Below are positions 4,523 through 51,363 of a DNA stretch of 64,000 nucleotides, in pieces. Both the position numbers and the translations under genes were made by a program. Each line of letters starts with the position of its first letter. The stretch's first letter is position 1. The notes under the pieces were generated by a model, which saw only the letters and a list, made by a program, of their open reading frames with translations, was not told where the DNA came from and ran no database searches. The stretch covers positions 124,001 to 188,000 of the IMG/VR virus record IMGVR_UViG_3300035698_013060; one strand, given 5' to 3'.

Positions 4523-4534
4523 TAAGGGGATGTT
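4523..4534 (-). promoter_or_regulatory. late (nvRNAP-type) promoter AACA-TCCCCT-TA
   Basis: matches AACA-N6-TR; about 30 nt upstream of rnhA. Confidence 0.6.
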
Positions 4535-4546
4535 CCCTTTGTTGAG

Positions 4547-4573
4547 AAACCCCCAGCCCGTGAGGACTGGGGG
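4547..4573 (-). terminator. terminator hairpin
   Basis: cccccag..ctggggg stem followed by tttct on the minus strand. Confidence 0.6.
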
Positions 4574-4584
4574 ATCGTCTTGTA

Positions 4585-4596
4585 CGTAATATGAGT
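4585..4596 (-). promoter_or_regulatory. early-type motif ACTCATATTACG
   Basis: ATATTA core shared with 7 other sites. Confidence 0.4.
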
Positions 4597-4602
4597 TTGG
4601 GT

Positions 4603-5187
4603 CTAGCCGATGCGTTTCTGCCAATCCCGACTATCGTGGATCTTTTCGATTTTGGGATGATGTAGGAGATCGTCAGCTAGGATTGGCTTACCTGGTGTTG
4701 ATGATCCAAGGAATTCATACCATGCTTCCCAGCACAACTCAAAGCAATAGATTTCCTCGTTACCGGACTTGAACTCGAAGTCGTATTCAGTACCTTCAAC
4801 ATTGAGGGCCTTCTGAACAGCCTCCGTACAGTTCTTCTTCTTAGTCCCGGTCATTCGAGCTAGAGCGATCCGGTCTGTCCTGAAGAACGTCAGAATATCT
4901 TCTTTAACGACGTCATGAGTTGTGGCGTGAATGATTGTCTTGTCGTCAACTATCAGGGCAGCATGGCTGAAGTACCCTGGAATGAAGATAGAGTTGATGT
5001 AGCCGTCATATCGCCTGAAGATCATATCCCCGGGCTTCATGATATTGATGACATGTCGTTGTTCAGGTCCTCTCACCTTGTACTTGGTGTTGCCAAACGA
5101 CATCCAGAACGGATACTTGTGGAACTGGATACTACCAAACAACTTGATAGCGAGCTTGGTGGCTCTGTACTTCAAGGATCGTGCCAT
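4603..5187 (-). CDS. permuted NlpC/P60 (YiiX/YebB-like) papain-fold amidase
   Basis: KPGDMIF, GYFSHAAL, IIHA, YDF, IYCFEL motifs (His precedes Cys). Confidence 0.85.
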   Translation of the reverse strand: MARSLKYRATKLAIKLFGSIQFHKYPFWMSFGNTKYKVRGPEQRHVINIMKPGDMIFRRYDGYINSIFIPGYFSHAALIVDDKTIIHATTHDVVKEDILTFFRTDRIALARMTGTKKKNCTEAVQKALNVEGTEYDFEFKSGNEEIYCFELCWEAWYEFLGSSTPGKPILADDLLHHPKIEKIHDSRDWQKRIG

Positions 5188-5245
5188 TGTTCTATCCTCC
5201 TTATTGGAAGAACTGAAAAGGTAAGGGCCGGTCTCCCGGCCCTCT

Positions 5246-5257
5246 CAATGGCATGTT
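5246..5257 (-). promoter_or_regulatory. late promoter AACA-TGCCAT-TG
   Basis: AACA-N6-TG in the intergenic gap. Confidence 0.7.
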
Positions 5258-5263
5258 CTACTC

Positions 5264-5722
5264 TCAATCGTCCTTGGGGAAGCTGATTACCTCACCCCTG
5301 AGCTCAATGGGTTGATGGACTCCCCTGACCTTTCTGATCATGGTAATTTTTCCATCTACTACTCCATAGACCTCTTTCCAAACCTCGTCTGGTGCAGACT
5401 TGGAAGGGATAGAGCAAAATACCATGTCACTTCTGATCCGCCTGATAATCTCGATCTCGTTGGAGCCTTCGAGAAGTTTCACTGATACGATAGATTCTCT
5501 TTCATTTGAGATGAGTGATGCTGCCATGGTAGCAGCGTGTCTTGGCTCAACTTTAACGACACCTTCCTGAGTTTCTGTTTTCATAATTCTTAGGTTCTCC
5601 CTTGCGATTTCTCCCACCGTACTACGTTTTATCCTTTCCACAAGCTGGACGTATCCGTCCATGCTGAGTTCATCACCTGAGTTGTGGTAGGTATCAAAGC
5701 TGACGGTAAGTCTTTCTTTCAT
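5264..5722 (-). CDS. hypothetical protein (152 aa)
   Basis: ATGA overlap with the primase stop. Confidence 0.7.
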   Translation of the reverse strand: MKERLTVSFDTYHNSGDELSMDGYVQLVERIKRSTVGEIARENLRIMKTETQEGVVKVEPRHAATMAASLISNERESIVSVKLLEGSNEIEIIRRIRSDMVFCSIPSKSAPDEVWKEVYGVVDGKITMIRKVRGVHQPIELRGEVISFPKDD

Positions 5723-6741
5723 ACGATTGCTCTTCTGAGCTTGATCTCTTCTCGCTTCATACCGAAGTCCTTTCCGATCGAGTTGTAGTTAACCTCGATC
5801 TTTTCGTGTTTCAAGAGAGAGTCTTCTCTCTTGAGCCACCTGAAGAACGGTAGTCCAACCTCAGCGTCCGCGTAGAAGCGAACGTCTAGATTAAGGAAGC
5901 CCCTTGTCCTAACGGCTTTCAAGGCCGAAGCAAAGTACTTCCCACCGGCTGCTGCGAAGATTACGTCCCTTCTCTCCGCTAGATCGGGGAGTATGTGATA
6001 GGACACTCCGAGCAAATCCATGGCACCTTCAGTCATCACTAATATAACTCGTTCGGTCATGGCTTCAACCTCTTTTGGAACGGCAAAGAGGCTGTTGGAA
6101 AAGGGATCCTCACCATACAACATGCAGGCGTAGTATCTCTTCTTCCAATTTCCGGTTGTATCCCTGATTGCTAACTGTGAATGGTCTGATGAGAGGAATC
6201 CTATTCCTTCTCGAGCCAAACGCTTTATGGTTTTAGGTTCCTCCTCAAGTTTAAGCCCGTTCACCTTGATGAACCAGCCGATATCTGCGATTATACTGTA
6301 GTTCAGCCCTGCCTTGGATGGTGGAATACTGATACCTAACCTGTCCTCTACGTAGCCTAGCCTCCGGCAAGCGTCCCGATCCAGATGGATCGGGAGCTTT
6401 AACCGATGGAACCCTCCTCCAGTCTTCGGACGGAACTTTTTCCTAGCCCTAGATAGGTTGGCATGAGCCATCCTAAGGGCACCGTCATCGAAGCACCTGA
6501 GGTCTCTAACGAAGTCGGGGCTTACTGCCCCCTTCGCCTCACACCTCACGCACCTCCATATGAGGAACTCCGGGTTCTTCAACCGGATATTGAGGTGCGC
6601 ACTCATGGGGTTCTTCTGAGAATCCCCGCAATACGGGCATCTCACCGACGCGTTTCTACCACGCCGGTCCACATAGAGGACGTCGATCCTTTCTTTCAGC
6701 CTCTCCACGAAGCCATCGACGTCTTTTTGTTCCACGGTCAC
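5719..6741 (-). CDS. DNA primase (T4 gp61-like, Zn ribbon plus TOPRIM)
   Basis: RCPYCGDS...H...RCVRC; TEGAMD; YADAE; KDFG. Confidence 0.85.
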   Translation of the reverse strand: MTVEQKDVDGFVERLKERIDVLYVDRRGRNASVRCPYCGDSQKNPMSAHLNIRLKNPEFLIWRCVRCEAKGAVSPDFVRDLRCFDDGALRMAHANLSRARKKFRPKTGGGFHRLKLPIHLDRDACRRLGYVEDRLGISIPPSKAGLNYSIIADIGWFIKVNGLKLEEEPKTIKRLAREGIGFLSSDHSQLAIRDTTGNWKKRYYACMLYGEDPFSNSLFAVPKEVEAMTERVILVMTEGAMDLLGVSYHILPDLAERRDVIFAAAGGKYFASALKAVRTRGFLNLDVRFYADAEVGLPFFRWLKREDSLLKHEKIEVNYNSIGKDFGMKREEIKLRRAIV

Positions 6742-6751: not shown

Positions 6752-6763
6752 CAATGTCATGTT
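6752..6763 (-). promoter_or_regulatory. late/middle promoter AACA-TGACAT-TG
   Basis: AACA-N6-TG in the 25-nt gap directly before the primase SD. Confidence 0.7.
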
Positions 6764-6766: not shown

Positions 6767-8248
6767 TCAGATGCTTTCCACCAGCTTGAGTACCTCATCC
6801 GTTATCCGGTTTATGGGGTAAGTATTGATATCTTTCGCCGGAACTTCAATCTCGCCCATCTCTTGCTCGTAGCTGGGTAACTCGACCGATGTGTTCACGA
6901 AGATAGTCGAAATAAGCTTGGCCAACACATTGTTACGCGACAGGTTCCCTAACGCATAACGGTACTTGACCTCTGAGAGGTACTTATACGATTGGGAACC
7001 TAAAAGACCGTTCACGAAGTCCTTCGTAGAAACGATTCGGCGCTCCAGGTCTATACCATCCGGGAACGTCGTAGTAACCCACCGGGACAGGAACTCGAAC
7101 CCGTTCGCTCGAAGCCACTTCTTAAAGAACACCAACAGAATGGCATACTCGCCGAACCTAAGGTTATACATGGAGTGGTATCGTCCGACCCTCTTCGCAA
7201 AGAACAGGAACATCAGGTTTGTCTGGACGGTGTTAACCTGGACACCATCCTTGTAATACTCCACTTCTTCTTGGGTGATCTGGATCTTAGGGTGCCTGAG
7301 ACACGATACGATCAAGTCTGACAGTCTGGCTTCCGTGACCAGAGATGCGCTTTCATCAAGCCGGGCCAGTTGGAACTCAAGTCTCTCGAAGTTCGTAAGG
7401 CGTTCGTTCTGTGGGTCCGTTACCTCATACAGATTCTGAGGACGGTAGGTCAGGGCAAAGTTCGCCTTGAACTGATACTGTAGAAGGTTTTTCAACGTCA
7501 CGTGGAGATAACTCACCACAGGCCGCGTCGGTTCTAACTTCGGAATGATGTCGATCATCAACTTCCTGAAGAACTGCGAACTAATGATGTTGGGATCCAC
7601 TGCCATGTTCAACAGTAGGTTCCACATCGTCTTGTCAGAGTACCTTGTAGTACGAACCCGAGAAGACACGATCTTGAAGATCTTGTCCTTGATGTTGACC
7701 CCATCACGGTCTACAGCCTCAAAGCATGGTTCGAAGCACAGTAAGAAGAGTCGATCGTTGCGCCCGTGGCCCCTCTTGGACAGATACTCCGTGATCAACG
7801 GAACCAAAACCTTCATTAGGAAAGAGGCTTTCAGAACGATCTTCGAGTGTTCATCAGTAAACTGAAGCTCGACATTCGCCTTCTTCCTCTTTCTAGTCCC
7901 TTCGCCAGCCGGGACATAGACTTTGTCAATGAACTCTTCAGCTGCATCCTTGCACTCCCATACAAGTTTCCGGCAGTCCCGAGCTAGATCTTCTTCAGAG
8001 TACTCCGGATAACTTTCAATCCGGTGACGAATGCACATGAATTCAATGCCCGCCATCTCCGACTTGTCAAACGATACCTGTATGGATTCCTTGATTCTTC
8101 CTGCACACTCAGGCTTGGCGTATGACCTCTTCTTAGTGAGGCTCATGGTGTCAAACCGATCATCCCCCAACTTATGAATCTCGTTAAAGTTAATGAGAAT
8201 TGATTTCGCATCCTCATCTAATTCGCATACTAGTTTCATACCCTTCAT
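6767..8248 (-). CDS. non-virion RNA polymerase promoter-specificity (sigma-like) subunit, AR9 gp226 / phiKZ gp68 family (493 aa)
   Basis: blocks KKRSY, KKANVELQFTD..KIVLKASFLMKVLVP, KIFKIVSSRV..TRYSD..W, IIPKL...VVSYL, EVLKLV are collinear with AR9 gp226 as I recall it; start moved to ATG 8248 (GGAG/AAGGA SD). Confidence 0.85.
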   Translation of the reverse strand: MKGMKLVCELDEDAKSILINFNEIHKLGDDRFDTMSLTKKRSYAKPECAGRIKESIQVSFDKSEMAGIEFMCIRHRIESYPEYSEEDLARDCRKLVWECKDAAEEFIDKVYVPAGEGTRKRKKANVELQFTDEHSKIVLKASFLMKVLVPLITEYLSKRGHGRNDRLFLLCFEPCFEAVDRDGVNIKDKIFKIVSSRVRTTRYSDKTMWNLLLNMAVDPNIISSQFFRKLMIDIIPKLEPTRPVVSYLHVTLKNLLQYQFKANFALTYRPQNLYEVTDPQNERLTNFERLEFQLARLDESASLVTEARLSDLIVSCLRHPKIQITQEEVEYYKDGVQVNTVQTNLMFLFFAKRVGRYHSMYNLRFGEYAILLVFFKKWLRANGFEFLSRWVTTTFPDGIDLERRIVSTKDFVNGLLGSQSYKYLSEVKYRYALGNLSRNNVLAKLISTIFVNTSVELPSYEQEMGEIEVPAKDINTYPINRITDEVLKLVESI

Positions 8249-8305
8249 ATCCTTCTCTCCCTTCTGCGTTCGGTTATTGTCAAGGGCAATGCTGCCGCTA
8301 GCCCC

Positions 8306-8317
8306 TAATATATGCTC
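8306..8317 (-). promoter_or_regulatory. early promoter GAGCATATATTA
   Basis: TATATTA core about 60 nt upstream of the gp226 homologue. Confidence 0.7.
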
Positions 8318-9095
8318 ACCTACTCCGACGTTTCCCTGTTGAAGATTTAGCCTTCCTCGTAGATTTAGCTTTCCTCGTAGTTGACTTTGACACTCGCTTG
8401 GCAGGCCGAGCCGCCTTAGCCCTCTTTGCAGTCCCAGAAGGTCTTTCCCTTTGGATTCGTTTCTTAGCAGCCTCCCGATCCTTCGTTTTCTTTCTCTCAG
8501 CTGCCTCAATCTTGACCACTCGTTCGTACTTCCTGAAGATTGTCTCGAAGTCTTCTACAGTCTTCGAGACCTCCTTCTCTTTCAGTTCTTGTTTATCCTC
8601 ATGTTTGATAGTGTGAAGCCTGGCATGGAGAATGTACGTAGCAGCGAAGAAGAATGATTTATCAAAACCAAAGATTGCACTCGGGTTTGCAACAACTGGC
8701 TTCTGCTCGTACATCTCCTTGTCGAACTTGTCCTTCAACCACTCGATCAAGAACCAGCCTTTGTTAGCCACATAAGCGTGACCACTAAAGACAAAGGCGG
8801 GGTTGTTGCTAAAGAGTCTCACGTCAGAGTCCATGAGGGACTTCTTGGTTCCGGTTGCCCGAGCCTCGATTAGAACGTCCCACCAGAACCGCTTCTTCTC
8901 CAGAGTCTCAGAAGGGACTTGGATATAGAAGAGGGTAAGATCATCTGTCCTATAGACAGCAGCTCTGAACCTTTTACCAACCTTGATCATCTCCCCGAAC
9001 CGTCGGTTCAGATCATCAATGATTCGGTACCGAGCTGCCGTATGAGCAGTCCCCGGCCCGGTTGGGTTGGTCATGAGCTCTTTCAGCGTAGGCAT
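8316..9095 (-). CDS. conserved jumbo-phage hypothetical protein with Lys/Arg-rich tail
   Basis: GGAG SD; lies between gp226-like and chaperonin genes; tail STTRKAKSTRKAKS encoded by an 18-nt duplication. Confidence 0.8.
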   Translation of the reverse strand: MPTLKELMTNPTGPGTAHTAARYRIIDDLNRRFGEMIKVGKRFRAAVYRTDDLTLFYIQVPSETLEKKRFWWDVLIEARATGTKKSLMDSDVRLFSNNPAFVFSGHAYVANKGWFLIEWLKDKFDKEMYEQKPVVANPSAIFGFDKSFFFAATYILHARLHTIKHEDKQELKEKEVSKTVEDFETIFRKYERVVKIEAAERKKTKDREAAKKRIQRERPSGTAKRAKAARPAKRVSKSTTRKAKSTRKAKSSTGKRRSR

Positions 9096-9114: not shown

Positions 9115-10821
9115 TCAGAAAGGTCCAGCATTTCCGACAGTTCCTACGAACGATCCTGAGGACATGAACCGAGTACTTCCGGCCAGGAGACCGACAATAC
9201 TGACAGCCGTTCTCAGAGTCTCTATGTCTGCTTCGGTCGAACTGACGACCTTCGTTTCGTTGGCGGGTTCGAAATCCCCAGTGACCACGTTGTAAACCTC
9301 TTCGGAGTCAGTACACCTCTTGATGATCTCAGTACACTCAATTTCTCCGATTCCAGCATTCGCCATGATTCTGGCCACAACCTTGGTATAGGCTGTACCA
9401 ATAGCATGAAGGATTGAAGGACTACATCCTTTCTGGATTTCAGATTCAGGGACTTTGTCACCATCGCCGTAGATTCTGCTGATAATCTGCAGGACTCCCA
9501 TGCAGCAACCTGGAACGATCCCGCTCCGAGCAGCACTTTGCACTGCGAAGACAGCGTCCTCTACCAGGAAGGACGTAGTCCGACGCTCCTGAGGAGAATC
9601 TCCACCGACGAAGATGGTGATCATACCACTCTCACTCAGTCCAGAGAATCGGCGTTTGAGTCTCACCAGCTCTTCGATATTGTCCTTGACTTGATCTTCC
9701 TCGATATCCTTCAAAGCTTCCAAGATGAGAGCATGCCTCTCTTTGGCTGCATCGAAAGACTCAGGGGACATCCCGGAGAACAGAGATTTGTTCTCTTCGA
9801 TAGTGACCTCACCGACAACTCCCAAGAGCATATCGATCGTCTCGACGCTTTGGAATAGATCTTGAAGAGTAGCGTGTTCGTTGATGTCGAACGGAGTCGA
9901 TGACGTAAAAGCTACGAGATCATCGAACACCTCTCTGGCGTGGGGAGACTCGACAGCGATGTCCAACGGACAGATCACCAGCTTTTCCTGGAACTGAGCT
10001 TTGTTCTTGTATAGAAATGAGAAGAACATCTCGTCAAAAGCTGGAGCCATAATGACAAGGGCTTGGTTGGAAGCCATGCAGTGCTGCAAGAGTGGGCTGA
10101 ACATCCGAACATCGTCAGCCGTGAGCTTCTCTCTCGACATAAAGATACGGACGGCTCCGGCCGCTTTAAACTTCTCGCGGTTCTGATCGTTGGCGAAAGA
10201 GTGATGCATCATACCCCTGGGATGCTCGATACCACTCGACTCCTTGATAGAAGAGGATGGACCTGTAGCCTCCTTGACTGTGATAACTCCATGCCCACCA
10301 GACTTACTGAAGGCATCAGCAACGATAGTTCCGATTACCGGGTCGTTGTTGGCAGAGATCGTAGCAACATCCTTCAGGATTTCCTGGAATACTACGTCAG
10401 TGTATTCCCCTTTGGTGTTGTGCAGATTCACGATCTCGGAACACAGAAACTCCGAGGTCTGTTTCATCTCCCGTAGAGTGGCAGCATTGCAACCACCACT
10501 TTCAAGAAGGCTCTTGAGTAGATCAGCGGCTACCAAGACTGCTGTCGTTGTCCCATCTCCGACTGTCCTATTCAACCTGGAGGAAACCCTCTGAAGGAAA
10601 CCGAGGATTGTCCGGTCCAGCTCATTGTTGAACGCCATCTTACTCAGAACGGTATACCCGTCCTTGGTGCAGAAGTGCTGAAGCATTTGGTCCTGAATCA
10701 GGACATTACCACCACCCGGGCCGAGAGTTGCCCCTACTGCATCAGTCACATCATTCAGGACCATCACGATCCTCTCGGCTGTCTCTTCCTGCCCCAGCAG
10801 GTTGCTGTTTTTCTCTGGCAT
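9115..10821 (-). CDS. groEL: phage GroEL-like chaperonin
   Basis: TLGPGG, TKDGYTV, GDGTTT, ISANND, VGG, VEDA..A..GIVPG; no GGM tail. Confidence 0.93.
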   Translation of the reverse strand: MPEKNSNLLGQEETAERIVMVLNDVTDAVGATLGPGGGNVLIQDQMLQHFCTKDGYTVLSKMAFNNELDRTILGFLQRVSSRLNRTVGDGTTTAVLVAADLLKSLLESGGCNAATLREMKQTSEFLCSEIVNLHNTKGEYTDVVFQEILKDVATISANNDPVIGTIVADAFSKSGGHGVITVKEATGPSSSIKESSGIEHPRGMMHHSFANDQNREKFKAAGAVRIFMSREKLTADDVRMFSPLLQHCMASNQALVIMAPAFDEMFFSFLYKNKAQFQEKLVICPLDIAVESPHAREVFDDLVAFTSSTPFDINEHATLQDLFQSVETIDMLLGVVGEVTIEENKSLFSGMSPESFDAAKERHALILEALKDIEEDQVKDNIEELVRLKRRFSGLSESGMITIFVGGDSPQERRTTSFLVEDAVFAVQSAARSGIVPGCCMGVLQIISRIYGDGDKVPESEIQKGCSPSILHAIGTAYTKVVARIMANAGIGEIECTEIIKRCTDSEEVYNVVTGDFEPANETKVVSSTEADIETLRTAVSIVGLLAGSTRFMSSGSFVGTVGNAGPF

Positions 10822-11422: not shown

Positions 11423-11626
11423 TTACCTCCTCTGCTTCCTAGCGTTAGCGGCTTCTTGCCGCTTACGCTCGCGTTCCTGATCTTCCATGATCTCACGCCG
11501 CCTCTTGTCCTTCTCTTCAAGCAACCGAGATCGGGCCTCTCCTAGCCGCTGGAGAGTTCCGATCTCATAGCGTTCAAAGACGTCTTCGAGACTAAGCTGC
11601 CCCTCGAAGACGTCCATATAGAACAC
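11423..11626 (-). CDS. gpT-like downstream frame of a tail/baseplate assembly chaperone
   Basis: -1 frame relative to the upstream gene, open from just before GGTTTTT; no SD of its own. Confidence 0.6.
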   Translation of the reverse strand: MFYMDVFEGQLSLEDVFERYEIGTLQRLGEARSRLLEEKDKRRREIMEDQERERKRQEAANARKQRR

Positions 11627-13161
11627 TACGTCGTCTGATTGTCGCTTGTTGAAGGCGTCGAGGTCTGCTCCATCCGAAAAACCAATAGCCGCTCAATGTC
11701 GATATTGATGTCTCCGATGTCCTCTTTACACGAAGGACATGGCATAGCCTTGAGACGGTGAGAAACTGAGTACTCACTTTCCTTCTCGTTGATGCATCTG
11801 TTCAATTCATCAGCATCTTCGGAAGGAAGATCACAGACAACCCTGAACTTCTCAGCCCAGTCTTCGAGAGGGGCGAACACGGGTTTTCCGGTCCTCCTGA
11901 TTGCTTCGATGTTGGGCAGGAACACGTCCTTAATATATATCATCGAACCAAAGGTCTCCCTCTGGCCTTTGATATTACTTGCACTGGTGTAGAAGCCAAG
12001 CATGTTCAAGTGGTCTTGAAGACTGGCCGTACGGACATCGATGACCACTTTGGACTTCGGGAGGATGATTCTTTTCGTCCTGTGGACCAGTGAACGCCCA
12101 AGGAGTTCCATGGGCTTGATCTGGGACTTAATGACCTCATCGATCCACGCAAAGATGGCATCGTCATGTACTTTGATGAACGACGCGGGTTTGACCTTCA
12201 CTTGCACCGGCCTGTGACACTTACCACATGTTACTGTGAATTCAGTGTCGCCTGGATAGGTCTGACAGAAGATGCCAAAGAGAAGCGTATCGAGGTCATC
12301 GAAGGCCGTGACCTTCAAGAACTCAGTAAACGTCATTTCACCAACACTGCAAGGGCCGATCTTGTCATGGACGGTGGAGTAGAACCGCTTCCGCTCATTG
12401 AGTGGGTCAGCACTACTGTTTCGTAGGACATCCTTGTCTTTGAACGTCAACCCTTTCATTCCAGCTGAGTAAGCCGAACGCAGAGCGATCACTTGGTATG
12501 TTGCATCGGTTTCGAGAGCGGTCTGAGCAAACTTGTTCCGTTGAATCAGGTTCGCTTCCTGGATGTCCAGCTGACTCAGATCTACTACGAGAGAATCGAG
12601 GATTTCTCTGTCAGGATTCGGGATAGAATCCCCACCTGATTTCTTTTCAGAGTCCTTCTTCTCTTGGGCTTGTTGATTGGCTGTATCGTATGCAGCTTCC
12701 AAGAAGTTAGGAGTCCCTTCCGGAGCCTTAACGATCTTTTCAGGCTCGGGTGCCAATTCCAGTACCGGAGTAGTATCTTTCAGTCTTTCATCGGATTTAA
12801 CTACCACTTCTGGCTCTCCCTTTTTCGGTTCGATTTTTGTCCCTGGACCAGTCTCTACATCAATCACTGGACCAGTCTCTACAGTAGTCTCTATACCGGT
12901 CTCTACGACAGTTCCTGATTCCGGAAGGTCTTCAACCACTGAATCTCTCAGAGATGCTTCAGCCCGGGCCCTCGCAGTTTCCATCGGGTTGACAGCAGCC
13001 TCTCCATCTTCAGGGTACTGTACTGTACTCGAAGATTCGGCTCTGGCCTTAACCTCTAATTCCTTGCGCGTCTTCTCGAGTTTCTTCCGATCAACCGGAG
13101 GCTTGCGTCTCATTGGGGCTTCTTCGGAGGATCCTTGAGTGTTACTTGCTTCGTTTGCCAT
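11626..13161 (-). CDS. baseplate hub/tail assembly chaperone (T4 gp26/gp51-like or gpG-like)
   Basis: GLTFKD..L, D.D.LLFGI, VTCGKC and CPSC Zn ribbons; long acidic N-terminus; GGGAG SD at ATG 13161. Confidence 0.65.
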   Translation of the reverse strand: MANEASNTQGSSEEAPMRRKPPVDRKKLEKTRKELEVKARAESSSTVQYPEDGEAAVNPMETARARAEASLRDSVVEDLPESGTVVETGIETTVETGPVIDVETGPGTKIEPKKGEPEVVVKSDERLKDTTPVLELAPEPEKIVKAPEGTPNFLEAAYDTANQQAQEKKDSEKKSGGDSIPNPDREILDSLVVDLSQLDIQEANLIQRNKFAQTALETDATYQVIALRSAYSAGMKGLTFKDKDVLRNSSADPLNERKRFYSTVHDKIGPCSVGEMTFTEFLKVTAFDDLDTLLFGIFCQTYPGDTEFTVTCGKCHRPVQVKVKPASFIKVHDDAIFAWIDEVIKSQIKPMELLGRSLVHRTKRIILPKSKVVIDVRTASLQDHLNMLGFYTSASNIKGQRETFGSMIYIKDVFLPNIEAIRRTGKPVFAPLEDWAEKFRVVCDLPSEDADELNRCINEKESEYSVSHRLKAMPCPSCKEDIGDINIDIERLLVFRMEQTSTPSTSDNQTT

Positions 13162-13197
13162 GTCGGAGTATCTCCCGTTTTTCAGTTGGATTCTTCG

Positions 13198-13210
13198 CAA
13201 TTACCATGTT
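13198..13210 (-). promoter_or_regulatory. late promoter variant AACA-TGGTAAT-TG
   Basis: N7 spacing variant upstream of ATG 13161. Confidence 0.45.
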
Positions 13211-13701: not shown

Positions 13702-13713
13702 CAATGTTCTGTT
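13702..13713 (-). promoter_or_regulatory. late promoter AACA-GAACAT-TG
   Basis: leftward member of a divergent pair. Confidence 0.65.
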
Positions 13714-13783: not shown

Positions 13784-13795
13784 AACAACCCATTA
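13784..13795 (+). promoter_or_regulatory. late promoter AACA-ACCCAT-TA
   Basis: rightward member of a divergent pair. Confidence 0.65.
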
Positions 13796-14600: not shown

Positions 14601-14613
14601 AGACATATATTAC
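14601..14613 (+). promoter_or_regulatory. early promoter AGACATATATTAC
   Basis: contains TATATTAC, the phiKZ early motif as I recall it. Confidence 0.6.
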
Positions 14614-14676: not shown

Positions 14677-14688
14677 AACACTAGATAG
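14677..14688 (+). promoter_or_regulatory. late promoter variant AACA-CTAGAT-AG
   Basis: directly before the AAGGAG SD. Confidence 0.55.
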
Positions 14689-17495: not shown

Positions 17496-17507
17496 AACAC
17501 ATATTAT
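17496..17507 (+). promoter_or_regulatory. early promoter AACACATATTAT
   Basis: ATATTA core after a terminator, before a stand-alone gene. Confidence 0.6.
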
Positions 17508-19138: not shown

Positions 19139-19325
19139 GGTCTTTTCTCCGTATCAAGGGTTCAGTAGAAAGTATACCCCCTAGCGGGTCCTCAGGCCTT
19201 TACCGGCCGGTGAACGCGTCTAGGGGGCTCTCGCCAAAAAATCTGTCAAGGAGAGCCAGGGTGCGAGTAGTGTCCCGGGGCTCCTGTGCGCGACTTTCAT
19301 CCGATGCCAGATCCGGTGTCAGTCG

Positions 19326-19364
19326 CATTGTCATGTTGGCCTCTCAAAAACCTAATTTGATGTT
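19326..19364 (-). promoter_or_regulatory. tandem late promoters AACA-TCAAAT-TA (19353-19364) and AACA-TGACAA-TG (19326-19337)
   Basis: two strict AACA-N6-TR matches. Confidence 0.65.
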
Positions 19365-22008: not shown

Positions 22009-22020
22009 CAATAAGATGTT
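22009..22020 (-). promoter_or_regulatory. late promoter AACA-TCTTAT-TG
   Basis: strict match. Confidence 0.7.
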
Positions 22021-22550: not shown

Positions 22551-22562
22551 AACAATCAATAG
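22551..22562 (+). promoter_or_regulatory. late promoter variant AACA-ATCAAT-AG
   Basis: upstream of the baseplate operon. Confidence 0.55.
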
Positions 22563-26733: not shown

Positions 26734-26745
26734 AACATAGAATTA
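26734..26745 (+). promoter_or_regulatory. late promoter AACA-TAGAAT-TA
   Basis: strict match. Confidence 0.7.
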
Positions 26746-26804
26746 AACGTACTAAATCACCTGCCGTGGCGCGGGCTGTGAAGAAAAGAAAGAGGAACAC
26801 TGAA

Positions 26805-28889: not shown

Positions 28890-28901
28890 CATTAAGATGT
28901 T
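28890..28901 (-). promoter_or_regulatory. late promoter AACA-TCTTAA-TG
   Basis: strict match. Confidence 0.7.
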
Positions 28902-45322: not shown

Positions 45323-46480
45323 TTAGGTCAACTGTATGCCTACATGTGTAGTACCATCAGCCTTCTTAGCGACCAAGAATAGGTTGTCACTATCATCCTG
45401 CCAGAACGCTGCCCTTTCACCAGAGGCAGCCAAATCAGGAATCAGAGTCTGGTCGTACATGTTAATGGAAAGCTTGATGGCATCCCTGACGGCCTTTTCT
45501 GTAGCAGACTGCGTGTCATCAGCAGCACCATCAGCCCTGATAGAAGTGGTGGAAAACAGACGTCCAGTATCCATCCTCGCAATGGCTGTTCCTGAAATCG
45601 CTGAATCAGTCTTGATAGAACCGATGACAGTCGGAGCTGAACCAGTAGCGATCGTTCCTCCGATGACGACGACACCGTTGATGGAGTTCGGAAGAGGATT
45701 CCCCGTTGTGTTCTGTAGAGTGATACCTCCGCCGGATCCGGAGTTCACTACCATCAAGTCGAAGAGACTCGCGAAACCAGCCGTAAGACCAATCACCGGA
45801 GCGGAGTCTGAATCCACCAGTAGGTGACCATCATTGATCGCGAGTACTCCAACTCCGGAGATTGTCCCGGCCCCGGAGTAGTTCAGGTTGGTACATACCA
45901 GATTCATACCACTGTAGAGGATGATATTCGCTTCCTCAACGTTCACATGGTCAAGGTATGTACTTCCCTTGATATCGATCCTGGCACAAGACAACCGACT
46001 GAACTGAACGTATGAGTTCCTCAAGTCGAGGTAGGTGTCAGCCGTGATCCAGATATCACGCAGATAACAAGTTGTCTGGAAAGCACACTGACCTGCAAAA
46101 GTGAGATGAGCATCATTTCCGTTGATAGTCATCCCAATGTGATTCCAGTCCACACCTGCTGGGTGACTGAGCTCACACCCAGGCTGAAGATTCACAACGA
46201 GATCAGGGACGTCGTCGGGTGGAACGGAATCGAGGGCTTGGATAAACGTAACCAGCTCGGTCAGAGTATCGAGATAGGTCGGATCCTGTCCAGGAACGAT
46301 GACCTCGATATTTCCAGCCCATACGGGTGAGGACGCTACGTCCTCTACATCGTTAATACCCATCCCCACCCCAGTGGTGACTAGCTTTCTTCCAGCCGGA
46401 AGGTTTCCTCCAGCAGGAACGGGCAAGCTCGGCCTCTTGGGGAGCTCTGTATTGACAAACTGTTCGAATTGTGTAGCCAT
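45323..46480 (-). CDS. tail fibre / tailspike-like protein
   Basis: FEQFVNTELPKR N-terminus; beta-helix-like G/I/T-rich body. Confidence 0.65.
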   Translation of the reverse strand: MATQFEQFVNTELPKRPSLPVPAGGNLPAGRKLVTTGVGMGINDVEDVASSPVWAGNIEVIVPGQDPTYLDTLTELVTFIQALDSVPPDDVPDLVVNLQPGCELSHPAGVDWNHIGMTINGNDAHLTFAGQCAFQTTCYLRDIWITADTYLDLRNSYVQFSRLSCARIDIKGSTYLDHVNVEEANIILYSGMNLVCTNLNYSGAGTISGVGVLAINDGHLLVDSDSAPVIGLTAGFASLFDLMVVNSGSGGGITLQNTTGNPLPNSINGVVVIGGTIATGSAPTVIGSIKTDSAISGTAIARMDTGRLFSTTSIRADGAADDTQSATEKAVRDAIKLSINMYDQTLIPDLAASGERAAFWQDDSDNLFLVAKKADGTTHVGIQLT

Positions 46481-46503
46481 GTCAGTATCTCCTAGGTAAT
46501 CTC

Positions 46504-48168
46504 TTAGATTACTTCTTCGAGCTCGGCCTGCATCGTCCCTGCCGTGTTAGACACGGCATTAGGAAGATCACAGTTGTACCATACGGTTCCCTGAGGATCG
46601 ACCGATCCACCAAGGCCATCCAAGATGGTGTACTCATCCAGAGTATCATCCTGATCAGCCCTGTGATCGAAGTTGAGAGAACCAGAAGGACTCTTCGAGA
46701 GGTTCGTACATTCCAACTTCATTACATCCAAGACGGAGGTCTCTATGGCAACCTCTCTGTTAGGCCATGCTGAGATGGTGAGCGTCCTAAGGACGAATCC
46801 TCCGATGATGTAGTTCACACCATTGGTAGGAACGTTGATGACCTTTCCAGCCAGGTTGACGGCATCGAAGCTCCCCCACGCGTGGGATCCCTTCACGTCG
46901 TCATCATGGACCTGAAGATCTCTTGTCCAGACCATCGGTCCCCCTGCGAAAGCTGCTCCTTGGAACGTCCCAGACGGAGCGACCATTGTGGGAGGCTGGA
47001 GGAATTCCTGATTTCCAGTGACGGTGATGATATGATCTTGTGCGACAGTACCAGCATTACCACCACTTCTGAGTCTGGCAGCCGGAACGGCGATATCTAC
47101 CGTCATGTCAACATGTGCAATCTGGATGATGACATTTTCCACGGTGGATGCATCGTTAGCTGTTCTTGTCGCAGTGGCTCTGAGATTGTCAACGGAAACA
47201 TTGTAGTTTCCGGAGATTCTCTCAACTGTCTTGCTCGCTTCCACGACTGAAGGATTGGTAATGAGTAGCTCTGCACTGGGCGAGTCGAATAGTACAACAT
47301 CCAGATCTGAGGTGGTGATTACCACTGAAGCCGTCTCAGAGTCCTTGAGGGCTTCCTGTGCTCCGGGGTATGTGGTAATCCCGAATGAGACCGTTGGATG
47401 CAGATTGTTGAGCGGAAGGGTGTTCCCTGTTTCAAAGGCTGCCCCAAGGCTTCCACTGGCGTCTACGGCTTGAATCCGTGCAGTGAGGTTTTGTAGCGTC
47501 GTCCCTCTGTTGGCGATCGTAACCTGAATAGTCGTGTTCGTCGTTGATGCAAAGCTGTGTGAGGATGCTTGGCATGCACCAAAGCCTTCGACCTCGATCC
47601 CTATCATGGGCTCAACAGAATCGATGACGAGGTTGACTACGTCTCCTTCCTTGAGTTCTGTCTGAGTTCCAGGAAGTGCTCCAAACAGAGCTCCTGATAC
47701 TTCAGGTCCAACTTGGATGGTAACGTCACACGCGTTGATCGGACCATCAGAATGGATGGCTGTTACATCTCCGGAAGCTCCAAGAGTGATGTCCACTGTA
47801 CCAGCCCACATCGGTTGATCCGGGAGCTGAGTAAGTGTCACTGAGATACCGTTGACCGTGACTGAAGGTAACAGAGTTGTTCCTCCACTGATAGCCATGA
47901 CGCTAACGGCAATTTCACCGTCGTCAGAGGTACAAGAGATAAGCTCCAATCCGTCTGATCTGGTGACCTTTGAGCCAACATTTCCACCTGCTGCAGGAGC
48001 GATGTCTGTGATGAATATCCCACCAGAGATTCCACCAGCCGTCAGTCCTGCCATGATGGCGTCAATGGACCTAACGGCGTTGTTGAGAATCTGTCCCCAG
48101 TTGTCACTGTCGCCACCAATGTCTGGGAGCTCGATATCGTAATTCGGCGTGTGTTCGTTCTGTGCCAT
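46504..48168 (-). CDS. tail fibre / Ig-like beta-rich structural protein
   Basis: TPNY.I.LP.....W...LN anchor; YPG.Q.ALK..E; T/V/S-rich. Confidence 0.7.
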   Translation of the reverse strand: MAQNEHTPNYDIELPDIGGDSDNWGQILNNAVRSIDAIMAGLTAGGISGGIFITDIAPAAGGNVGSKVTRSDGLELISCTSDDGEIAVSVMAISGGTTLLPSVTVNGISVTLTQLPDQPMWAGTVDITLGASGDVTAIHSDGPINACDVTIQVGPEVSGALFGALPGTQTELKEGDVVNLVIDSVEPMIGIEVEGFGACQASSHSFASTTNTTIQVTIANRGTTLQNLTARIQAVDASGSLGAAFETGNTLPLNNLHPTVSFGITTYPGAQEALKDSETASVVITTSDLDVVLFDSPSAELLITNPSVVEASKTVERISGNYNVSVDNLRATATRTANDASTVENVIIQIAHVDMTVDIAVPAARLRSGGNAGTVAQDHIITVTGNQEFLQPPTMVAPSGTFQGAAFAGGPMVWTRDLQVHDDDVKGSHAWGSFDAVNLAGKVINVPTNGVNYIIGGFVLRTLTISAWPNREVAIETSVLDVMKLECTNLSKSPSGSLNFDHRADQDDTLDEYTILDGLGGSVDPQGTVWYNCDLPNAVSNTAGTMQAELEEVI

Positions 48169-48195
48169 TTCTTTACTCCTTTACGTCGATAAAAC

Positions 48196-48345
48196 TTATG
48201 CTCCGAAGTTCTTGGAGGCAAAACTGGGTGAGTCGGAGCCGTCGTCTCCGTAGTGGAGCTCGTTTCCGCTTACTCCAATGATACTCTGCCAATCAGCTCC
48301 AGGTTGGTTCACATCAGGAATTTCTGTGGTATAACTCGGAGGCAT
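48196..48345 (-). CDS. 49-aa mini-protein MPPSYTTEIPD...GNELHYGDDGSDSPSFASKNFGA (not in ORF track)
   Basis: AAGGAG SD; paralogous to the adjacent 44-aa ORF. Confidence 0.75.
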   Translation of the reverse strand: MPPSYTTEIPDVNQPGADWQSIIGVSGNELHYGDDGSDSPSFASKNFGA

Positions 48346-48369
48346 AATAACGACTCCTTCTTACGGGTC

Positions 48370-48504
48370 TTAGCCCCCGAAGTTTTTGTCCTTGAAACTC
48401 TCTTCGTCGGAACCATTGACTCCTCCATGGAGCTCAGTTCCCTCAATAGTATGATCAGTCTTGTATTGCTCGAGGTATTCTGATCTGGTGACGTCGTCAG
48501 CCAT
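48370..48504 (-). CDS. 44-aa mini-protein MADDVTRSEY...GTELHGGVNGSDEESFKDKNFGG (not in ORF track)
   Basis: AAGGAG SD; paralogous to the adjacent 49-aa ORF. Confidence 0.75.
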   Translation of the reverse strand: MADDVTRSEYLEQYKTDHTIEGTELHGGVNGSDEESFKDKNFGG

Positions 48505-48515
48505 TTCGTCTCTCC

Positions 48516-50336
48516 TTACAATCCAACGACGAAGCGTTCGGCCACGACTTCGCTGCTGTCATAGTTGCCTTCGTCCAGGTTCTCGCCAGACGCTTTGATT
48601 CTGAATATCTGGGACTCAGGATTACCGTAATTCCTGGTCTCATCGTAAAGATCATTTCCGACGTTGTGTTCATACAGGTCAGTCGGAGTGAACGCCCCTG
48701 TCGCTTTCACGGTAAAGTCATCGGCGTGTAGATCATTGATTGAGAAGATACCAGGTATCGTGGTCGGATCAACGTAGAAACCAATCAAGTACAGGTACTT
48801 CTCAAGGTCAGACCTGTAATAATCAGAGTTCAGGTTCATCTCTTTAGTGATACCGTTCTTCGGCACCGTGTACTTGACGTACAAGTACTCGTTCGACGGG
48901 AAGTTAGTAATCCTGAAAGCACCATCGGAGATGTTTTCCAGCTTGCCTTTGTCGACATACTGGTTGTTCATCACGACGTCGGTGTAGGTAACCCCCACTG
49001 GGAAATTCTCATGTCTGAGAAGGGTGATGATTCCATCTGTCGGAGTAGTGGTCACCTTGGTCTCGGTCATGAACCAGTTACTCGGCTCCTGCTTGATAAT
49101 CCTGACCTTTGATCCTATCGGCAGAGTGCCGTTGATCAGTCTGAGCTGAACTGGACTACCTGAACTACCAGTGTTCTCAATGAGATTGAAATCCCATCCA
49201 GGAACGAGTCTGTAACCGGCTGGAGAAGCTCCTGGTACGTGGATCGTTACCGCAATTTCACTCTCACTTTCAACTGGGAGCGGCATCTTGTCGATCATGG
49301 CCTGAGACCCGCTCGGGTCCAGGTCATTAAAATCAGTAGTGTCTCTGCCAGTGAATACGTCCGGATCCCCGGTAGGATCTCGCTCGTATCCCTCTGAGAT
49401 CAAGTCGAAATCCGTCTGACCACCTGAAGTGGTCTCGACATCGATGATCCAACCTGCTGAATTCGGGACAATGAAGACTTCATCACCAAAAGCAATGCCA
49501 TGACCTGTACTAAAGGTCAGTACTAATTGCTTGGCAACGGCACCGTCTTCTCTGGCAGTGTAGAAACTCCGGCTAAGTCTCTTGAAATAGGTCTCCCCAG
49601 AATGCCTGACATAGACGAGAAAATCGCCAAGGTCGTCAGCAGACTCATCATAGCAGTAGGGATAACCAATCTTGTCGATCTCAGTAAGCATGAAAGGATC
49701 GATTTCGTTCCATCCAGCACCGACGGTCAATCTATGCCACTTGGGAATATTCCAATGCCGTCTCATTTCGATCGAGATGACGTCATCATCGTCAACCTCT
49801 TCGATCGGTACGAACAGCGAATACCCAATTCCCTGACTGTGCAGATCGAAAGCGTCTGTTGGGAGCGGTCTACCGTTTTTGTAGACGAGCGTGTAGTAAT
49901 CCCCTTCTTCGAGCCTTTTGGCTCCATGCATTTGAAAGAAGACCACATCCGCCGCCGTCGGAAAGACGGAAGCCCAATCATATGCTGCACCATTCGCGTC
50001 AAAGACGCTGTCGTAAACGTATCCTGCAACACTGGGATACTGGAAATCTCTCTGGAAGTACGGATTGCAGAGGCTATTCAGATAATTCTGGATGTACCCT
50101 GGTACCCGTACCCCTGTTTCGTTGACATGGTTCTCAACTTGTTGCAACCGGTTCCAGACTTGTCCTAACCGATTGTTGATAACCAAATCGACCCAGTTGT
50201 TGAACGCCGTAGCGTCCTGTAGATCCAACTGACTGATTCCCTCGGCCTCTGGGACCATCGGGACGTAGCCGCTGTACATGTTCGTATCGAACAAGTCCCG
50301 GAGCAGCCTCTCTTGTCTTATCCAATTCGTGCTCAT
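48516..50336 (-). CDS. virion structural protein (baseplate/fibre-associated)
   Basis: acidic, beta-rich, VYKNGR-type repeats; late operon. Confidence 0.6.
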   Translation of the reverse strand: MSTNWIRQERLLRDLFDTNMYSGYVPMVPEAEGISQLDLQDATAFNNWVDLVINNRLGQVWNRLQQVENHVNETGVRVPGYIQNYLNSLCNPYFQRDFQYPSVAGYVYDSVFDANGAAYDWASVFPTAADVVFFQMHGAKRLEEGDYYTLVYKNGRPLPTDAFDLHSQGIGYSLFVPIEEVDDDDVISIEMRRHWNIPKWHRLTVGAGWNEIDPFMLTEIDKIGYPYCYDESADDLGDFLVYVRHSGETYFKRLSRSFYTAREDGAVAKQLVLTFSTGHGIAFGDEVFIVPNSAGWIIDVETTSGGQTDFDLISEGYERDPTGDPDVFTGRDTTDFNDLDPSGSQAMIDKMPLPVESESEIAVTIHVPGASPAGYRLVPGWDFNLIENTGSSGSPVQLRLINGTLPIGSKVRIIKQEPSNWFMTETKVTTTPTDGIITLLRHENFPVGVTYTDVVMNNQYVDKGKLENISDGAFRITNFPSNEYLYVKYTVPKNGITKEMNLNSDYYRSDLEKYLYLIGFYVDPTTIPGIFSINDLHADDFTVKATGAFTPTDLYEHNVGNDLYDETRNYGNPESQIFRIKASGENLDEGNYDSSEVVAERFVVGL

Positions 50337-50351
50337 CGGCGCGCTCCCGCT

Positions 50352-51296
50352 TTACTTTGTGAGCCTGAAGAACTCGAGGAAAGAGGCCTGGACCTGCTTG
50401 TCCGCGAGATTGTTGATCAACACTTCCGAATTGACACCTGAAAGGGTGGCAGCCCAGAAGACATTAACCACGAAGTAATGGAACGACTCAACGGCCAAAA
50501 GCGCCGACGGGCCGAACATTTTGGTCCATGCCTCGGTCAGAGATCTCAACGTAAGATGCTGGATCTTATCAACCGTTCCAGCAAGAGAGACGACGAAAGA
50601 TGAAAGGGAGTCATACTCCATAATCATCTCATCATCGGTCCTCTCGATGATACTCTTCGGGGTGTCATTCGGGATAATCCCGAAAGCAATCCCCTTGGTA
50701 GACGGGGTATCGGCTCGGCCCATCACACCAATCTGGAAGTACTTCGCTACGAGGTAATTTACCTTATCGGTCTGGAGTGGGTCTAGGTTAAGAGAATAGA
50801 GCCTATCCAAGCATCTGACGAACATTCTGGTGTAGACATGAGTCAAGTTCTTCACCAGATTAACGTTGTTTGTCAGCTTGTTCTCGTTGTGATAAATCCT
50901 CATCAGGACAAGCGCGGATTGGAGAAGCCCGAAGAGCTTCTTCGTATCGATGTCGAGTTCCTTCTCACCCTGTTTGGCATACGGAGAGAGATTAGAAACT
51001 GCTACTACTCGGTTCTTTTCGTTGTAAATCAACCACGACGGGATCGATGTCGGGATGATTGAACCGTTGTCGAAGACTGGAATTATCTCCGCTGAGCCAA
51101 CGGCCTCTATCACAGAAGGCCTTGACACATACTTGTATCTTCTCTGAATGATCCCCATGCCCTCACTGATCTTCTCCAGGGATACGGTAAAGTGCCCCAA
51201 CAGGAGATCGCCGGTCATGGCCTTGATGATGCTGTTCTTATAAGCTGAGGGGAAGCTATTGAACAGATCAAGTTCTGTCAGTTTCTTCAGGCTCAT
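50352..51296 (-). CDS. conserved jumbo-phage (virion) protein
   Basis: first gene after a late promoter; start uncertain (51296 or 51332). Confidence 0.65.
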   Translation of the reverse strand: MSLKKLTELDLFNSFPSAYKNSIIKAMTGDLLLGHFTVSLEKISEGMGIIQRRYKYVSRPSVIEAVGSAEIIPVFDNGSIIPTSIPSWLIYNEKNRVVAVSNLSPYAKQGEKELDIDTKKLFGLLQSALVLMRIYHNENKLTNNVNLVKNLTHVYTRMFVRCLDRLYSLNLDPLQTDKVNYLVAKYFQIGVMGRADTPSTKGIAFGIIPNDTPKSIIERTDDEMIMEYDSLSSFVVSLAGTVDKIQHLTLRSLTEAWTKMFGPSALLAVESFHYFVVNVFWAATLSGVNSEVLINNLADKQVQASFLEFFRLTK

Positions 51297-51351
51297 GGCT
51301 CTTCTCTCTTCTTTGTCTGGGTTGCTTGCCAACCATTTATTCTGTTCGGAT

Positions 51352-51363
51352 TAATTCCTTGTT
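51352..51363 (-). promoter_or_regulatory. late promoter AACA-AGGAAT-TA
   Basis: strict match. Confidence 0.7.

What the first reader, a model, noticed from the sequence alone, without database searches (positions are those of the whole stretch)
4523..51363. Complete late-promoter regulon readable from sequence: AACA-N6-T(A/G)
Seen: strict copies at 4523, 5246, 6752, 13702, 19326, 19353, 22009, 28890, 42253, 51352 (minus strand) and 13784, 26734, 42275 (plus strand), all intergenic or start-proximal and correctly oriented. Variants lie at 13198, 14677 and 22551. The local consensus is AACA-N4-A-W-W-R. Established (recalled): the AR9 late consensus is AACA-N6-TA/G. Inference: the nvRNAP promoter is conserved across a large compositional distance, and it drives primase and RNase H as well as structural genes.
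Basis: partly seen in the sequence, partly recalled or inferred. Interest (0 to 1): 0.65.

Follow-up and report, generated by a model that had tools for sequence, protein, structure and literature searches.

The report
AR9-type late promoters in a salt-lake jumbo phage
A giant phage genome from a salt lake carries, in front of its late genes, a sharp DNA motif with the same layout as the experimentally mapped late promoters of Bacillus phage AR9, and it encodes the matching phage RNA polymerase, so this is a real but already known kind of promoter in a new, distant relative.

Summary
The loose pattern AACA-N6-TR is barely above chance in the window (68 found, 50 expected). The tighter local form AACA-N4-ATT-R is not chance: 11 in the window against 2.9 expected, and 40 in the 241-kb genome, 31 of them in the 7.9% that is intergenic. 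An unbiased enumeration of gapped dyads ranks AACA-N4-ATTG first genome-wide (22 of 24 intergenic, p about 1e-22). The sites point at the downstream gene (17 to 1 in tandem gaps), and the final purine lies a median 44 nt before the start codon.

The genome is a distant AR9/PBS1 relative: 60 shared ORFs in synteny, GC 48% against 28%. It has all five nvRNAP subunits, and the gp226 sigma-like subunit lies inside the window (6767-8509, minus strand). Genes whose AR9 orthologue has a mapped late start site carry the motif 17 times out of 31; the others 2 out of 28 (p = 8e-5). AR9 primase and RNase H also have late promoters, so that part is not new. "Complete regulon" is an overclaim, and sites 4523 and 19326 are doubtful. 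No RNA data exist, so +1 is inferred. The critical Val206 of gp226 is Thr here.

The parts
5246..5257 (-). Late-promoter motif AACATGCCATTG. Predicted +1 is G at 5246, 59 nt before the Peptidase_C92-like gene 4603-5187. A terminator-like hairpin follows at +3 to +24.
   Evidence: (19.8 bits)
6752..6763 (-). Late-promoter motif AACATGACATTG between the gp226-like stop and the primase gene 5719-6741. The leader is 11-17 nt and contains GAGGAG.
   Evidence: 17.9 bits; AR9 g225 has a mapped late start site
13702..13713 (-). Late-promoter motif AACAGAACATTG, 42 nt before the baseplate-wedge gene 13229-13660 (AR9 g232 orthologue). It forms a divergent pair with 13784.
13784..13795 (+). Late-promoter motif AACAACCCATTA, 54 nt before the endonuclease gene 13849-14580 (AR9 g233 orthologue).
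19353..19364 (-). Late-promoter motif AACATCAAATTA, 20 nt before a roughly 47-aa ORF starting at 19333 and upstream of virion gene 18224-19138 (AR9 g216 orthologue).
19326..19337 (-). AACATGACAATG. Doubtful: it overlaps the ATG of the small ORF and scores 9.2 bits.
22009..22020 (-). Late-promoter motif AACATCTTATTG, 48 nt before virion gene 20504-21961 (AR9 g214 orthologue).
22551..22562 (+). Variant AACAATCAATAG (A at -1), 41 nt before virion gene 22603-23793 (AR9 g213 orthologue).
26734..26745 (+). Late-promoter motif AACATAGAATTA before gene 26766-27662 (AR9 g211 homologue). The true ATG is probably at 26805.
28890..28901 (-). Late-promoter motif AACATCTTAATG, 41 nt before gene 28271-28849.
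   Evidence: 13.5 bits
42253..42264 (-). Late-promoter motif AACATCCTATTG, 45 nt before the 2889-aa gene 33539-42208 (in the tape-measure position). It sits back to back with 42275; the two AACA boxes are 10 nt apart.
   Evidence: 19.0 bits
42275..42286 (+). Late-promoter motif AACAACTCATTG, 34 nt before gene 42320-43072.
   Evidence: 19.6 bits
51352..51363 (-). Late-promoter motif AACAAGGAATTA, 20 nt before virion gene 50352-51332 (AR9 g281 orthologue).
4523..4534 (-). Weak variant AACATCCCCTTA (C at -3), 30 nt before RNase H 3954-4493. An early-type ACTCATATTA motif lies about 94 nt upstream of the same gene.
   Evidence: (9.0 bits)
13198..13210 (-). Variant with spacer 5 (AACATGGTAATTG), about 46 nt before the likely ATG (13151) of gene 11626-13200 (AR9 g231 orthologue).
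14677..14688 (+). Variant AACACTAGATAG, 15 nt before gene 14703-15806.
58880..58891 (-). It may be an internal promoter.
6767..8509 (-). Gene for the nvRNAP promoter-specificity (sigma-like) subunit, a homologue of AR9 gp226. The real start is probably the ATG near 8247. The 2.1bis helix reads YSDKTMWNLL, with Thr at the Val206 position and Leu at the Tyr210 position.

Best explanation
The motif (G)AACA-N4-A-T-T-R is the late (non-early) promoter of this phage's own non-virion multisubunit RNA polymerase.

Shown:
- The motif is real, directional, and sits at a fixed short distance upstream of genes.
- The genome encodes homologues of all five AR9 nvRNAP subunits, including the gp226 sigma-like subunit.
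- The motif has the same layout and the same fine structure as the 93 experimentally mapped AR9 late promoters.
- It sits in front of orthologues of AR9 late-promoter genes.

Inferred from AR9 biochemistry and structure:
- The gp226-like subunit, together with the beta-N subunit, reads the complement of AACA (3'-TTGT/UUGU-5') at -11 to -8 on the template strand.
- Transcription starts at the final purine.
- The nvRNAP subunit genes themselves carry a different, AT-rich early-type motif (AC-N2-ATATTA). This gives the cascade: virion RNAP at early promoters, then nvRNAP, then AACA promoters.
For: Statistics:
- Window 11 against 2.9 expected; genome 31 of 40 intergenic.
- Top-ranked de novo dyad, p 1e-22.
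- Every fixed position and the spacer are required.
- Orientation 17 to 1 in tandem gaps.
- Median 44 nt from +1 to the start codon, 26 of 31 within 0-100 nt.

Enzyme:
- The window 6767-8509(-) protein hits only AR9 gp226 in the PDB (7S01_A, E 4.8e-37).
- It hits only gp226 homologues of the AR9/PBS1, phiR1-37, Staphylococcus and Listeria jumbo phages in GenBank phages.
- The gene order GroEL - X - gp226 - primase is conserved.
- Beta-N, beta-C, beta'-N and beta'-C homologues are 34-37% identical.
- Beta-N Arg363, which stacks on -10U in AR9, is conserved.

Promoter likeness. AR9 start sites re-extracted from Table S3 coordinates give:
- AACA at 93 of 94 consensus-class sites. The counts below are out of those 93.
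- C at -7 only once
- A at -3 in 68
- A or T at -2 in 92
- T at -1 in 88
- A or G at +1 in 92
These are the same preferences as here.

Positional orthology: 17 of 31 against 2 of 28, Fisher p 8e-5.

Regulatory logic:
- Virion-RNAP genes at genome 46965 and 86215 carry strong late motifs, as AR9 g145 and g189 do.
- The nvRNAP subunit genes carry the early-type motif instead.
- Sigma-70-like promoters are at chance level (17 against 16.5).
Against: - There is no transcript data. Only DNA metagenomes from salt lakes hold this phage, so promoter activity, timing and +1 are untested.
- The gp226 helix that forms the base pockets differs at the two best-characterised contact residues (Val206 to Thr, Tyr210 to Leu). 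Identical recognition chemistry cannot be assumed.
- The highest-scoring window site (5246) is followed at once by a terminator-like hairpin.
- Gene calls came from a crude longest-ORF caller.
- The orthology test is partly confounded, because first genes of operons tend to be first genes in both phages.
Confidence: 0.85

Rival explanations
1. The motif is an RNA-level element of the 5' leaders, such as a processing site, a stability signal or a translation signal, and not a DNA promoter.
For: It is directional and lies 20-70 nt before start codons. A leader element would do the same.
Against: - Back-to-back divergent pairs (42253/42286, 13702/13784, genome 115648/115683) leave only 10-70 nt between the two motifs. 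There is no room for upstream promoters that would transcribe them.
- The predicted leaders share no structure (mean z -0.35).
- No Rfam family matches.
- The identical layout is a DNA promoter in AR9, proven in vitro.
Confidence: 0.04
2. The motif is the binding site of a phage transcription factor, or a promoter read by another polymerase (the host RNAP with a phage factor, or the virion RNAP), and not by the nvRNAP.
For: Sequence alone cannot assign a motif to a protein. The gp226 contact residues differ from AR9.
Against: - A separate AT-rich motif that shares the ATATTA core with AR9's early promoter fills the early/vRNAP role.
- Host-type -35/-10 matches are at chance level.
- The motif is non-palindromic and matches the nvRNAP promoter of the nearest studied relative position by position.
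Confidence: 0.08
3. The pattern is a chance or compositional artefact picked out by eye.
For: AACA-N6-TR as written is only 68 against 50 +/- 7.5 in the window, and about four fifths of its matches lie in coding DNA.
Against: The tight form is enriched about tenfold in intergenic DNA. It is the top de novo dyad, is strand-consistent, and is positionally orthologous to AR9 late promoters.
Confidence: 0.01

Closest known systems
Late promoters of Bacillus phage AR9/PBS1 (A-11ACA-N6-T-A/G+1), read on the template strand by the nvRNAP holoenzyme with gp226 (Lavysh 2017 PMC5312081; Sokolova 2017 PMC5449584; Fraser 2022 PMC9209446)
   Same: - AACA box and spacing to the start-site T-purine.
- No C at -7, A at -3, A or T at -2.
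- Short leaders and frequent back-to-back divergent pairs.
- The same gene set is served: capsid, protease, sheath, vRNAP subunits, baseplate, primase, endonuclease.
- A homologous five-subunit polymerase in conserved synteny.
- A separate AT-rich early motif with the ATATTA core.
   Different: - Genome GC is 48% against 28%.
- The start-proximal part is much stricter here (A-T-T almost invariant) and +1 is mostly G (22 of 31), where AR9 has A (76 of 93).
- About 32-44 sites are recognisable, against 118 mapped start sites in AR9.
- gp226 has Thr for the 'absolutely conserved' Val206 and Leu for Tyr210.
- Uracil content of the DNA is unknown.
- Nothing has been tested experimentally.
phiKZ late promoters (T-3ATG+1), read by the phiKZ nvRNAP with gp68
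   Same: A multisubunit phage nvRNAP with a fifth specificity subunit, and a conserved element at the start site ending in T-G.
   Different: - phiKZ has no AACA box at -11 to -8.
- The window protein shows no detectable hit to phiKZ-group phages.
- The start-site element here is ATTG/ATTA, not TATG.
Bacterial sigma-70 -10 element
   Same: A short element about 10 nt upstream of +1, recognised by a sigma-like subunit.
   Different: In AR9 the element is read on the template strand, not the non-template strand (inferred here). There is no -35 element, and sigma-70-type matches are at chance in the window.

Membership tests
AR9-type nvRNAP late promoter | AACA at -11 to -8, followed by N6 and then T(-1) and purine(+1) | tested here: met
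   31 intergenic AACA-N4-ATTR sites. The spacer is strictly 4+2 and every fixed base is required.
AR9-type nvRNAP late promoter | Secondary preferences of mapped AR9 promoters: no C at -7, A at -3, A or T at -2 | tested here: met
   AR9 counts out of 93: C at -7 once, A at -3 in 68, A or T at -2 in 92. Here: C at -7 in 1 of 40, with A at -3 and T at -2 required.
AR9-type nvRNAP late promoter | The genome encodes the cognate enzyme: split beta and beta' nvRNAP subunits plus a gp226 homologue | tested here: met
   tblastn against AR9; PDB hit to 7S01_A at E 4.8e-37; conserved synteny.
AR9-type nvRNAP late promoter | Located upstream of late (virion and other non-early) genes, orthologous to those with mapped AR9 late start sites | tested here: met
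   17 of 31 against 2 of 28, Fisher p 8e-5.
AR9-type nvRNAP late promoter | Transcription starts at the final purine, late in infection and dependent on phage protein synthesis | not testable with these tools
   No RNA run holds the phage, and the host is unknown.
AR9-type nvRNAP late promoter | Template-strand recognition that requires deoxyuridine at -11 and -10 | not testable with these tools
   Indirect evidence only:
- No ThyA, ThyX or dUTPase in the genome.
- dCMP deaminase and an AR9 g151-like nucleotidase are present.
- The discriminating Val206 is Thr here.
gp226 family (nvRNAP sigma-like subunit of dU-DNA jumbo phages) | 2.1bis helix with an 'absolutely conserved' Val206 (PMC9209446) | tested here: not met
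   The window protein has YSDKTMWNLL, with Thr at 206 and Leu at 210. L022-L025 show the same; most other relatives keep Val. Full-length homology is otherwise met.

The most novel reading that the evidence does not exclude
The Thr206/Leu210 form of the gp226 helix, shared by this phage and four AT-rich IMG/VR relatives, could mark a natural lineage whose nvRNAP reads the AACA complement in ordinary thymine DNA. That would be a natural counterpart of the engineered V206G enzyme. Its unusually strict ATT-purine start element would then compensate for the lost uracil discrimination. The evidence does not exclude this, but it leans the other way. Thr is isosteric with Val and keeps the C-beta that is said to clash with the thymine methyl, and the gene content looks like that of a dU phage.
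Probability: 0.2. Interest if true: 0.7.

Novelty: new member of a known kind. Interest (0 to 1): 0.45.

Why it matters
The AR9 nvRNAP is the only known multisubunit RNA polymerase that reads its -10-like element on the template strand. Its promoter has been defined in one AT-rich phage group.

This genome shows the same promoter, down to its secondary preferences, in a relative with 25-40% protein identity and a neutral base composition. The AACA/T-purine code is therefore old and stable in this lineage.

Late promoters can here be predicted from sequence. A 2020 review (PMC7598289) says bioinformatics fails to do this for RNAP-encoding jumbo phages.

The near-invariant A-T-T-purine start element gives a clean substrate for a question left open in the AR9 structure paper: how the start-site part of the consensus is recognised.

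The Thr206/Leu210 variant and a Lys206 class among metagenomic relatives show that the 'absolutely conserved valine' is not universal. They offer natural variants for testing uracil against thymine discrimination.

Tried and rejected
- Megablast of 8 kb of the window against GenBank phages found nothing. The phage has no close sequenced relative.
- The search for related loci with the single protein found only an identical 17.6-kb fragment from another sample. An alignment query was needed.
- RNA evidence: the run search returned 12 salt-lake DNA metagenomes and no RNA. Read laying was not used, because contigs cannot show transcript ends.
- Positional conservation of the gp226-primase intergenic promoter across 28 relatives: only AR9, L029 and L044 share it. 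This does not help.
- De novo dyad enumeration in two higher-GC relatives (G003 at 55% GC, G002 at 66%). The top motifs are terminators and an early-type TATATTAT. AACA-N6-TR is only 2-2.6-fold enriched in intergenic DNA. The exceptional sharpness is a property of this genome and is not general.
- RNA-structure explanation: Rfam gave nothing and the leaders are unstructured.
- Host sigma-70 promoters are at chance level.
- A uracil-DNA glycosylase inhibitor homologous to AR9 g104 was not found by tblastn. This is uninformative for so small and fast-evolving a protein.
- No structure prediction or complex prediction was run. The claims do not rest on them.


Full report
**What the window is.**
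- The window is bases 124001-188000 of a 241,176-bp IMG/VR virus record with direct terminal repeats and 48.4% GC. It is found only in salt-lake DNA metagenomes.
- Sixty of about 267 ORFs have tblastn hits in Bacillus phage AR9 (27.8% GC) at 23-58% identity, with long-range synteny.
- All five subunits of the AR9 non-virion RNA polymerase (nvRNAP) have homologues:

| Subunit | Coordinates |
|---|---|
| beta-N | genome 3209-4708(+) |
| beta-C | genome 236532-238607(+) |
| beta'-N | genome 109638-110993(-) |
| beta'-C | genome 60977-62821(+) |
| promoter-specificity subunit gp226 | window 6767-8509(-) |

- The gp226-like protein hits only gp226 homologues of the AR9/PBS1, phiR1-37, Staphylococcus S6-like and Listeria LPJP1 phages in GenBank.
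- In the PDB it hits only the AR9 gp226 chains (7S01_A, 7UM0, 7UM1; E 4.8e-37).
- The gene order GroEL - small ORF - gp226 - primase is the same as in AR9 g228-g225, and GroEL - X - gp226 recurs in the other relatives.

**The observation.**
- As written, AACA-N6-TR is a weak signal: 68 matches in the window against 50.4 +/- 7.5 in shuffles, and 273 in the genome, of which only 50 are intergenic.
AACA-N4-ATTR occurs 11 times in the window against 2.9 +/- 1.8. It occurs 40 times in the genome, 31 of them in the 7.9% of DNA left intergenic by a crude ORF caller.
- I enumerated all 4-mer/gap 0-8/4-mer dyads without any prior. AACA-N4-ATTG came first for intergenic enrichment (22 of 24, p 1.3e-22), followed by its own sub-patterns such as GAAC-N5-ATTG.
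- Substituting any fixed base, or changing the spacer, abolishes the enrichment. C is avoided at -7.
- In gaps between tandem genes the motif points with the genes 17 times and against them once. Thirteen further sites lie in divergent gaps.
- The final purine lies a median 44 nt before the start codon, and 26 of 31 sites fall within 0-100 nt.

**Link to AR9.**
- The recalled AR9 consensus is confirmed in the literature: 94 of 118 late start sites carry AACA-N6-T-A/G, with the last base as +1 (PMC5312081; PMC7598289).
- I re-extracted the AR9 promoters from the Table S3 coordinates.
- They share the finer features of the present motif (counts out of 93):
  - C at -7 once
  - A at -3 in 68
  - A or T at -2 in 92
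  - T at -1 in 88
  - a purine at +1 in 92
- Two differences stand out. The start-proximal A-T-T is nearly invariant here. G is preferred at +1 here (22 of 31), whereas AR9 prefers A (76 of 93).
- Of 59 genes with an AR9 homologue, those whose homologue has a consensus late start site directly upstream carry the motif (9 bits or more, within 250 nt) in 17 of 31 cases. The rest do so in 2 of 28 (Fisher p 8e-5).
- The shared set includes the major capsid protein, prohead protease, tail sheath, both large virion-RNAP subunits, baseplate wedge g232, endonuclease g233, virion proteins g213, g214, g216 and g281, and primase g225.
- AR9 RNase H g241 has both an early promoter and a late start site. 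Here RNase H has an early-type motif plus the weak 4523 variant.

**Regulatory logic.**
- A second intergenic motif, AC-N2-ATATTA, often has CGTAAATA about 14 nt upstream. It occurs 27 times, 19 of them intergenic.
- It shares the ATATTA core with AR9's early promoter AAATATATATTAT.
- It precedes the genes for nvRNAP beta-N, beta'-C and beta-C, both DNA polymerase pieces, RNase H, and the gp226-like gene. For the last, GAGCATATATTAG lies about 65 nt before the probable true ATG near 8247.
- None of the five nvRNAP subunit genes has a recognisable late motif, whereas two of the four virion-RNAP genes carry strong ones.
- This is the AR9 cascade. Sigma-70-type promoters are at chance level.

**Limits.**
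- 'Complete regulon' is not supported.
  - The PWM finds about 32 intergenic sites at 12 bits or more and about 44 at 8 bits or more. AR9 has 118 late start sites.
  - Fourteen orthologues of AR9 late-promoter genes have no recognisable site.
  - Operons such as 57052-60289(-), 2645-3406(-) and 45323-48168(-) lack a strict copy.
- The best-scoring window site, 5246, is followed at +3 to +24 by a GC-rich hairpin and a T-rich tract (z -4.5). Its output is uncertain.
- No RNA data exist, so promoter activity, timing and +1 rest on homology.
- Gene calls are crude.

**The sigma-like subunit differs where it matters.**
- In AR9 the 2.1bis helix (D204-VVIWTY-L211) forms the pockets for template-strand -10U and -9G.
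  - Val206 excludes thymine, and V206G accepts it.
  - Tyr210 stacks on -9G.
  - The valine is described as absolutely conserved in dU phages (PMC9209446).
- The window protein reads D-KTMWNL-L, with Thr206 and Leu210.
- Among 39 IMG/VR loci with gp226 homologues (GC 19-66%), residue 206 falls into three classes:

| Residue 206 | Loci |
|---|---|
| Val | most loci |
| Thr (with Leu210) | this phage and L022-L025 (28% GC) |
| Lys | L044, L046-L049, L051 |

- The Thr-class relatives also concentrate AACA-N4-AWTR in intergenic DNA: 8 of 10, 9 of 11 and 9 of 12. AACA recognition therefore survives the substitution.
- Beta-N Arg363 is conserved.
- Whether the DNA contains uracil is open.
  - There is no ThyA, ThyX or dUTPase.
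  - A dCMP deaminase and a homologue of the AR9 g151 deoxyribonucleotidase are present.
  - Thr is isosteric with Val.
  - I lean towards a dU genome (about two in three, an inference).

**Verdict.** This is a correct and well-read observation of a known promoter class in a new, compositionally distant relative. Two points take it beyond confirmation. The late promoters are unusually sharp and can be predicted from sequence. The contact helix of the specificity subunit is a natural variant. 

Noticed in passing
window 4580-4589(-), 8306-8318(-), 14603-14612(+), 17497-17506(+), 22509-22518(-), 60320-60329(+); genome-wide list: A second intergenic motif, AC-N2-ATATTA, often has CGTAAATA about 14 nt upstream. 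It shares its core with AR9's early promoter and precedes the nvRNAP subunit, DNA polymerase and RNase H genes. It is probably the virion-RNAP early promoter. At 14603 it lies between a stop codon and a hairpin, which is odd for a promoter.
   Followed up: partly
window 6767-8509(-), residues about 290-300; loci L022-L025, L044, L046-L051: The 'absolutely conserved' Val206 of gp226 is Thr (with Leu for Tyr210) in this phage and four relatives at 28% GC. It is Lys in another metagenomic group, whose loci show no intergenic enrichment of the AACA motif.
   Followed up: partly
window 8247-8509(-) against 8316-9095(-): The 580-aa gp226-like ORF overlaps the upstream 259-aa ORF by about 190 nt. Its first roughly 90 residues have no counterpart in AR9 gp226. 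The real start is probably the ATG near 8247, behind a GGAGAGAAGG ribosome-binding site.
   Followed up: partly
window about 19190-19333(-): An unannotated ORF of roughly 47 aa follows directly after the late motif at 19353. It lies in what looks like a 250-nt gap before virion gene 18224-19138.
   Followed up: no
window 5222-5243(-); genome 2968(-): Two strong late motifs are followed within 3 nt by a stable GC-rich hairpin and a T-rich tract (z -3.3 to -4.5). This could be a promoter placed just upstream of the preceding operon's terminator, or a 5' stabilising hairpin.
   Followed up: partly
whole genome G000; L084 (33341-34333,-), L085 (46204-46950,+): No thymidylate synthase (ThyA or ThyX) and no dUTPase in 241 kb. 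A dCMP deaminase and a homologue of the AR9 5'(3')-deoxyribonucleotidase are present. This gene content is compatible with a deoxyuridine genome in a salt-lake phage of neutral GC.
   Followed up: partly
window 9115-10821(-): A GroEL-type chaperonin gene sits two genes upstream of the sigma-like subunit gene in this phage, AR9, phiR1-37, Madawaska and LPJP1. This linkage is conserved across the whole group.
   Followed up: no
genome 200000-241176: The last 40 kb (mostly plus-strand, with gyrase, UvsX-like and nvRNAP beta-C genes) has only one strong late motif (230014) but several early-type motifs. It is probably the early region.
   Followed up: no
G003 (record behind L033, 263 kb, 55% GC): In this relative the top intergenic dyads are T-runs, hairpins and a TATATTAT-type early motif. 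The late motif looks like YAACA-N6-TA-G, with little constraint at -3 and -2 (47 of 233 AACA-N6-TR intergenic).
   Followed up: partly
genome 84466-86124(-): A free-standing homologue of the AR9 Hef-like homing endonuclease g146 lies next to the virion-RNAP beta gene (86215-90426). In AR9 that endonuclease sits inside an intron of a virion-RNAP gene.
   Followed up: no
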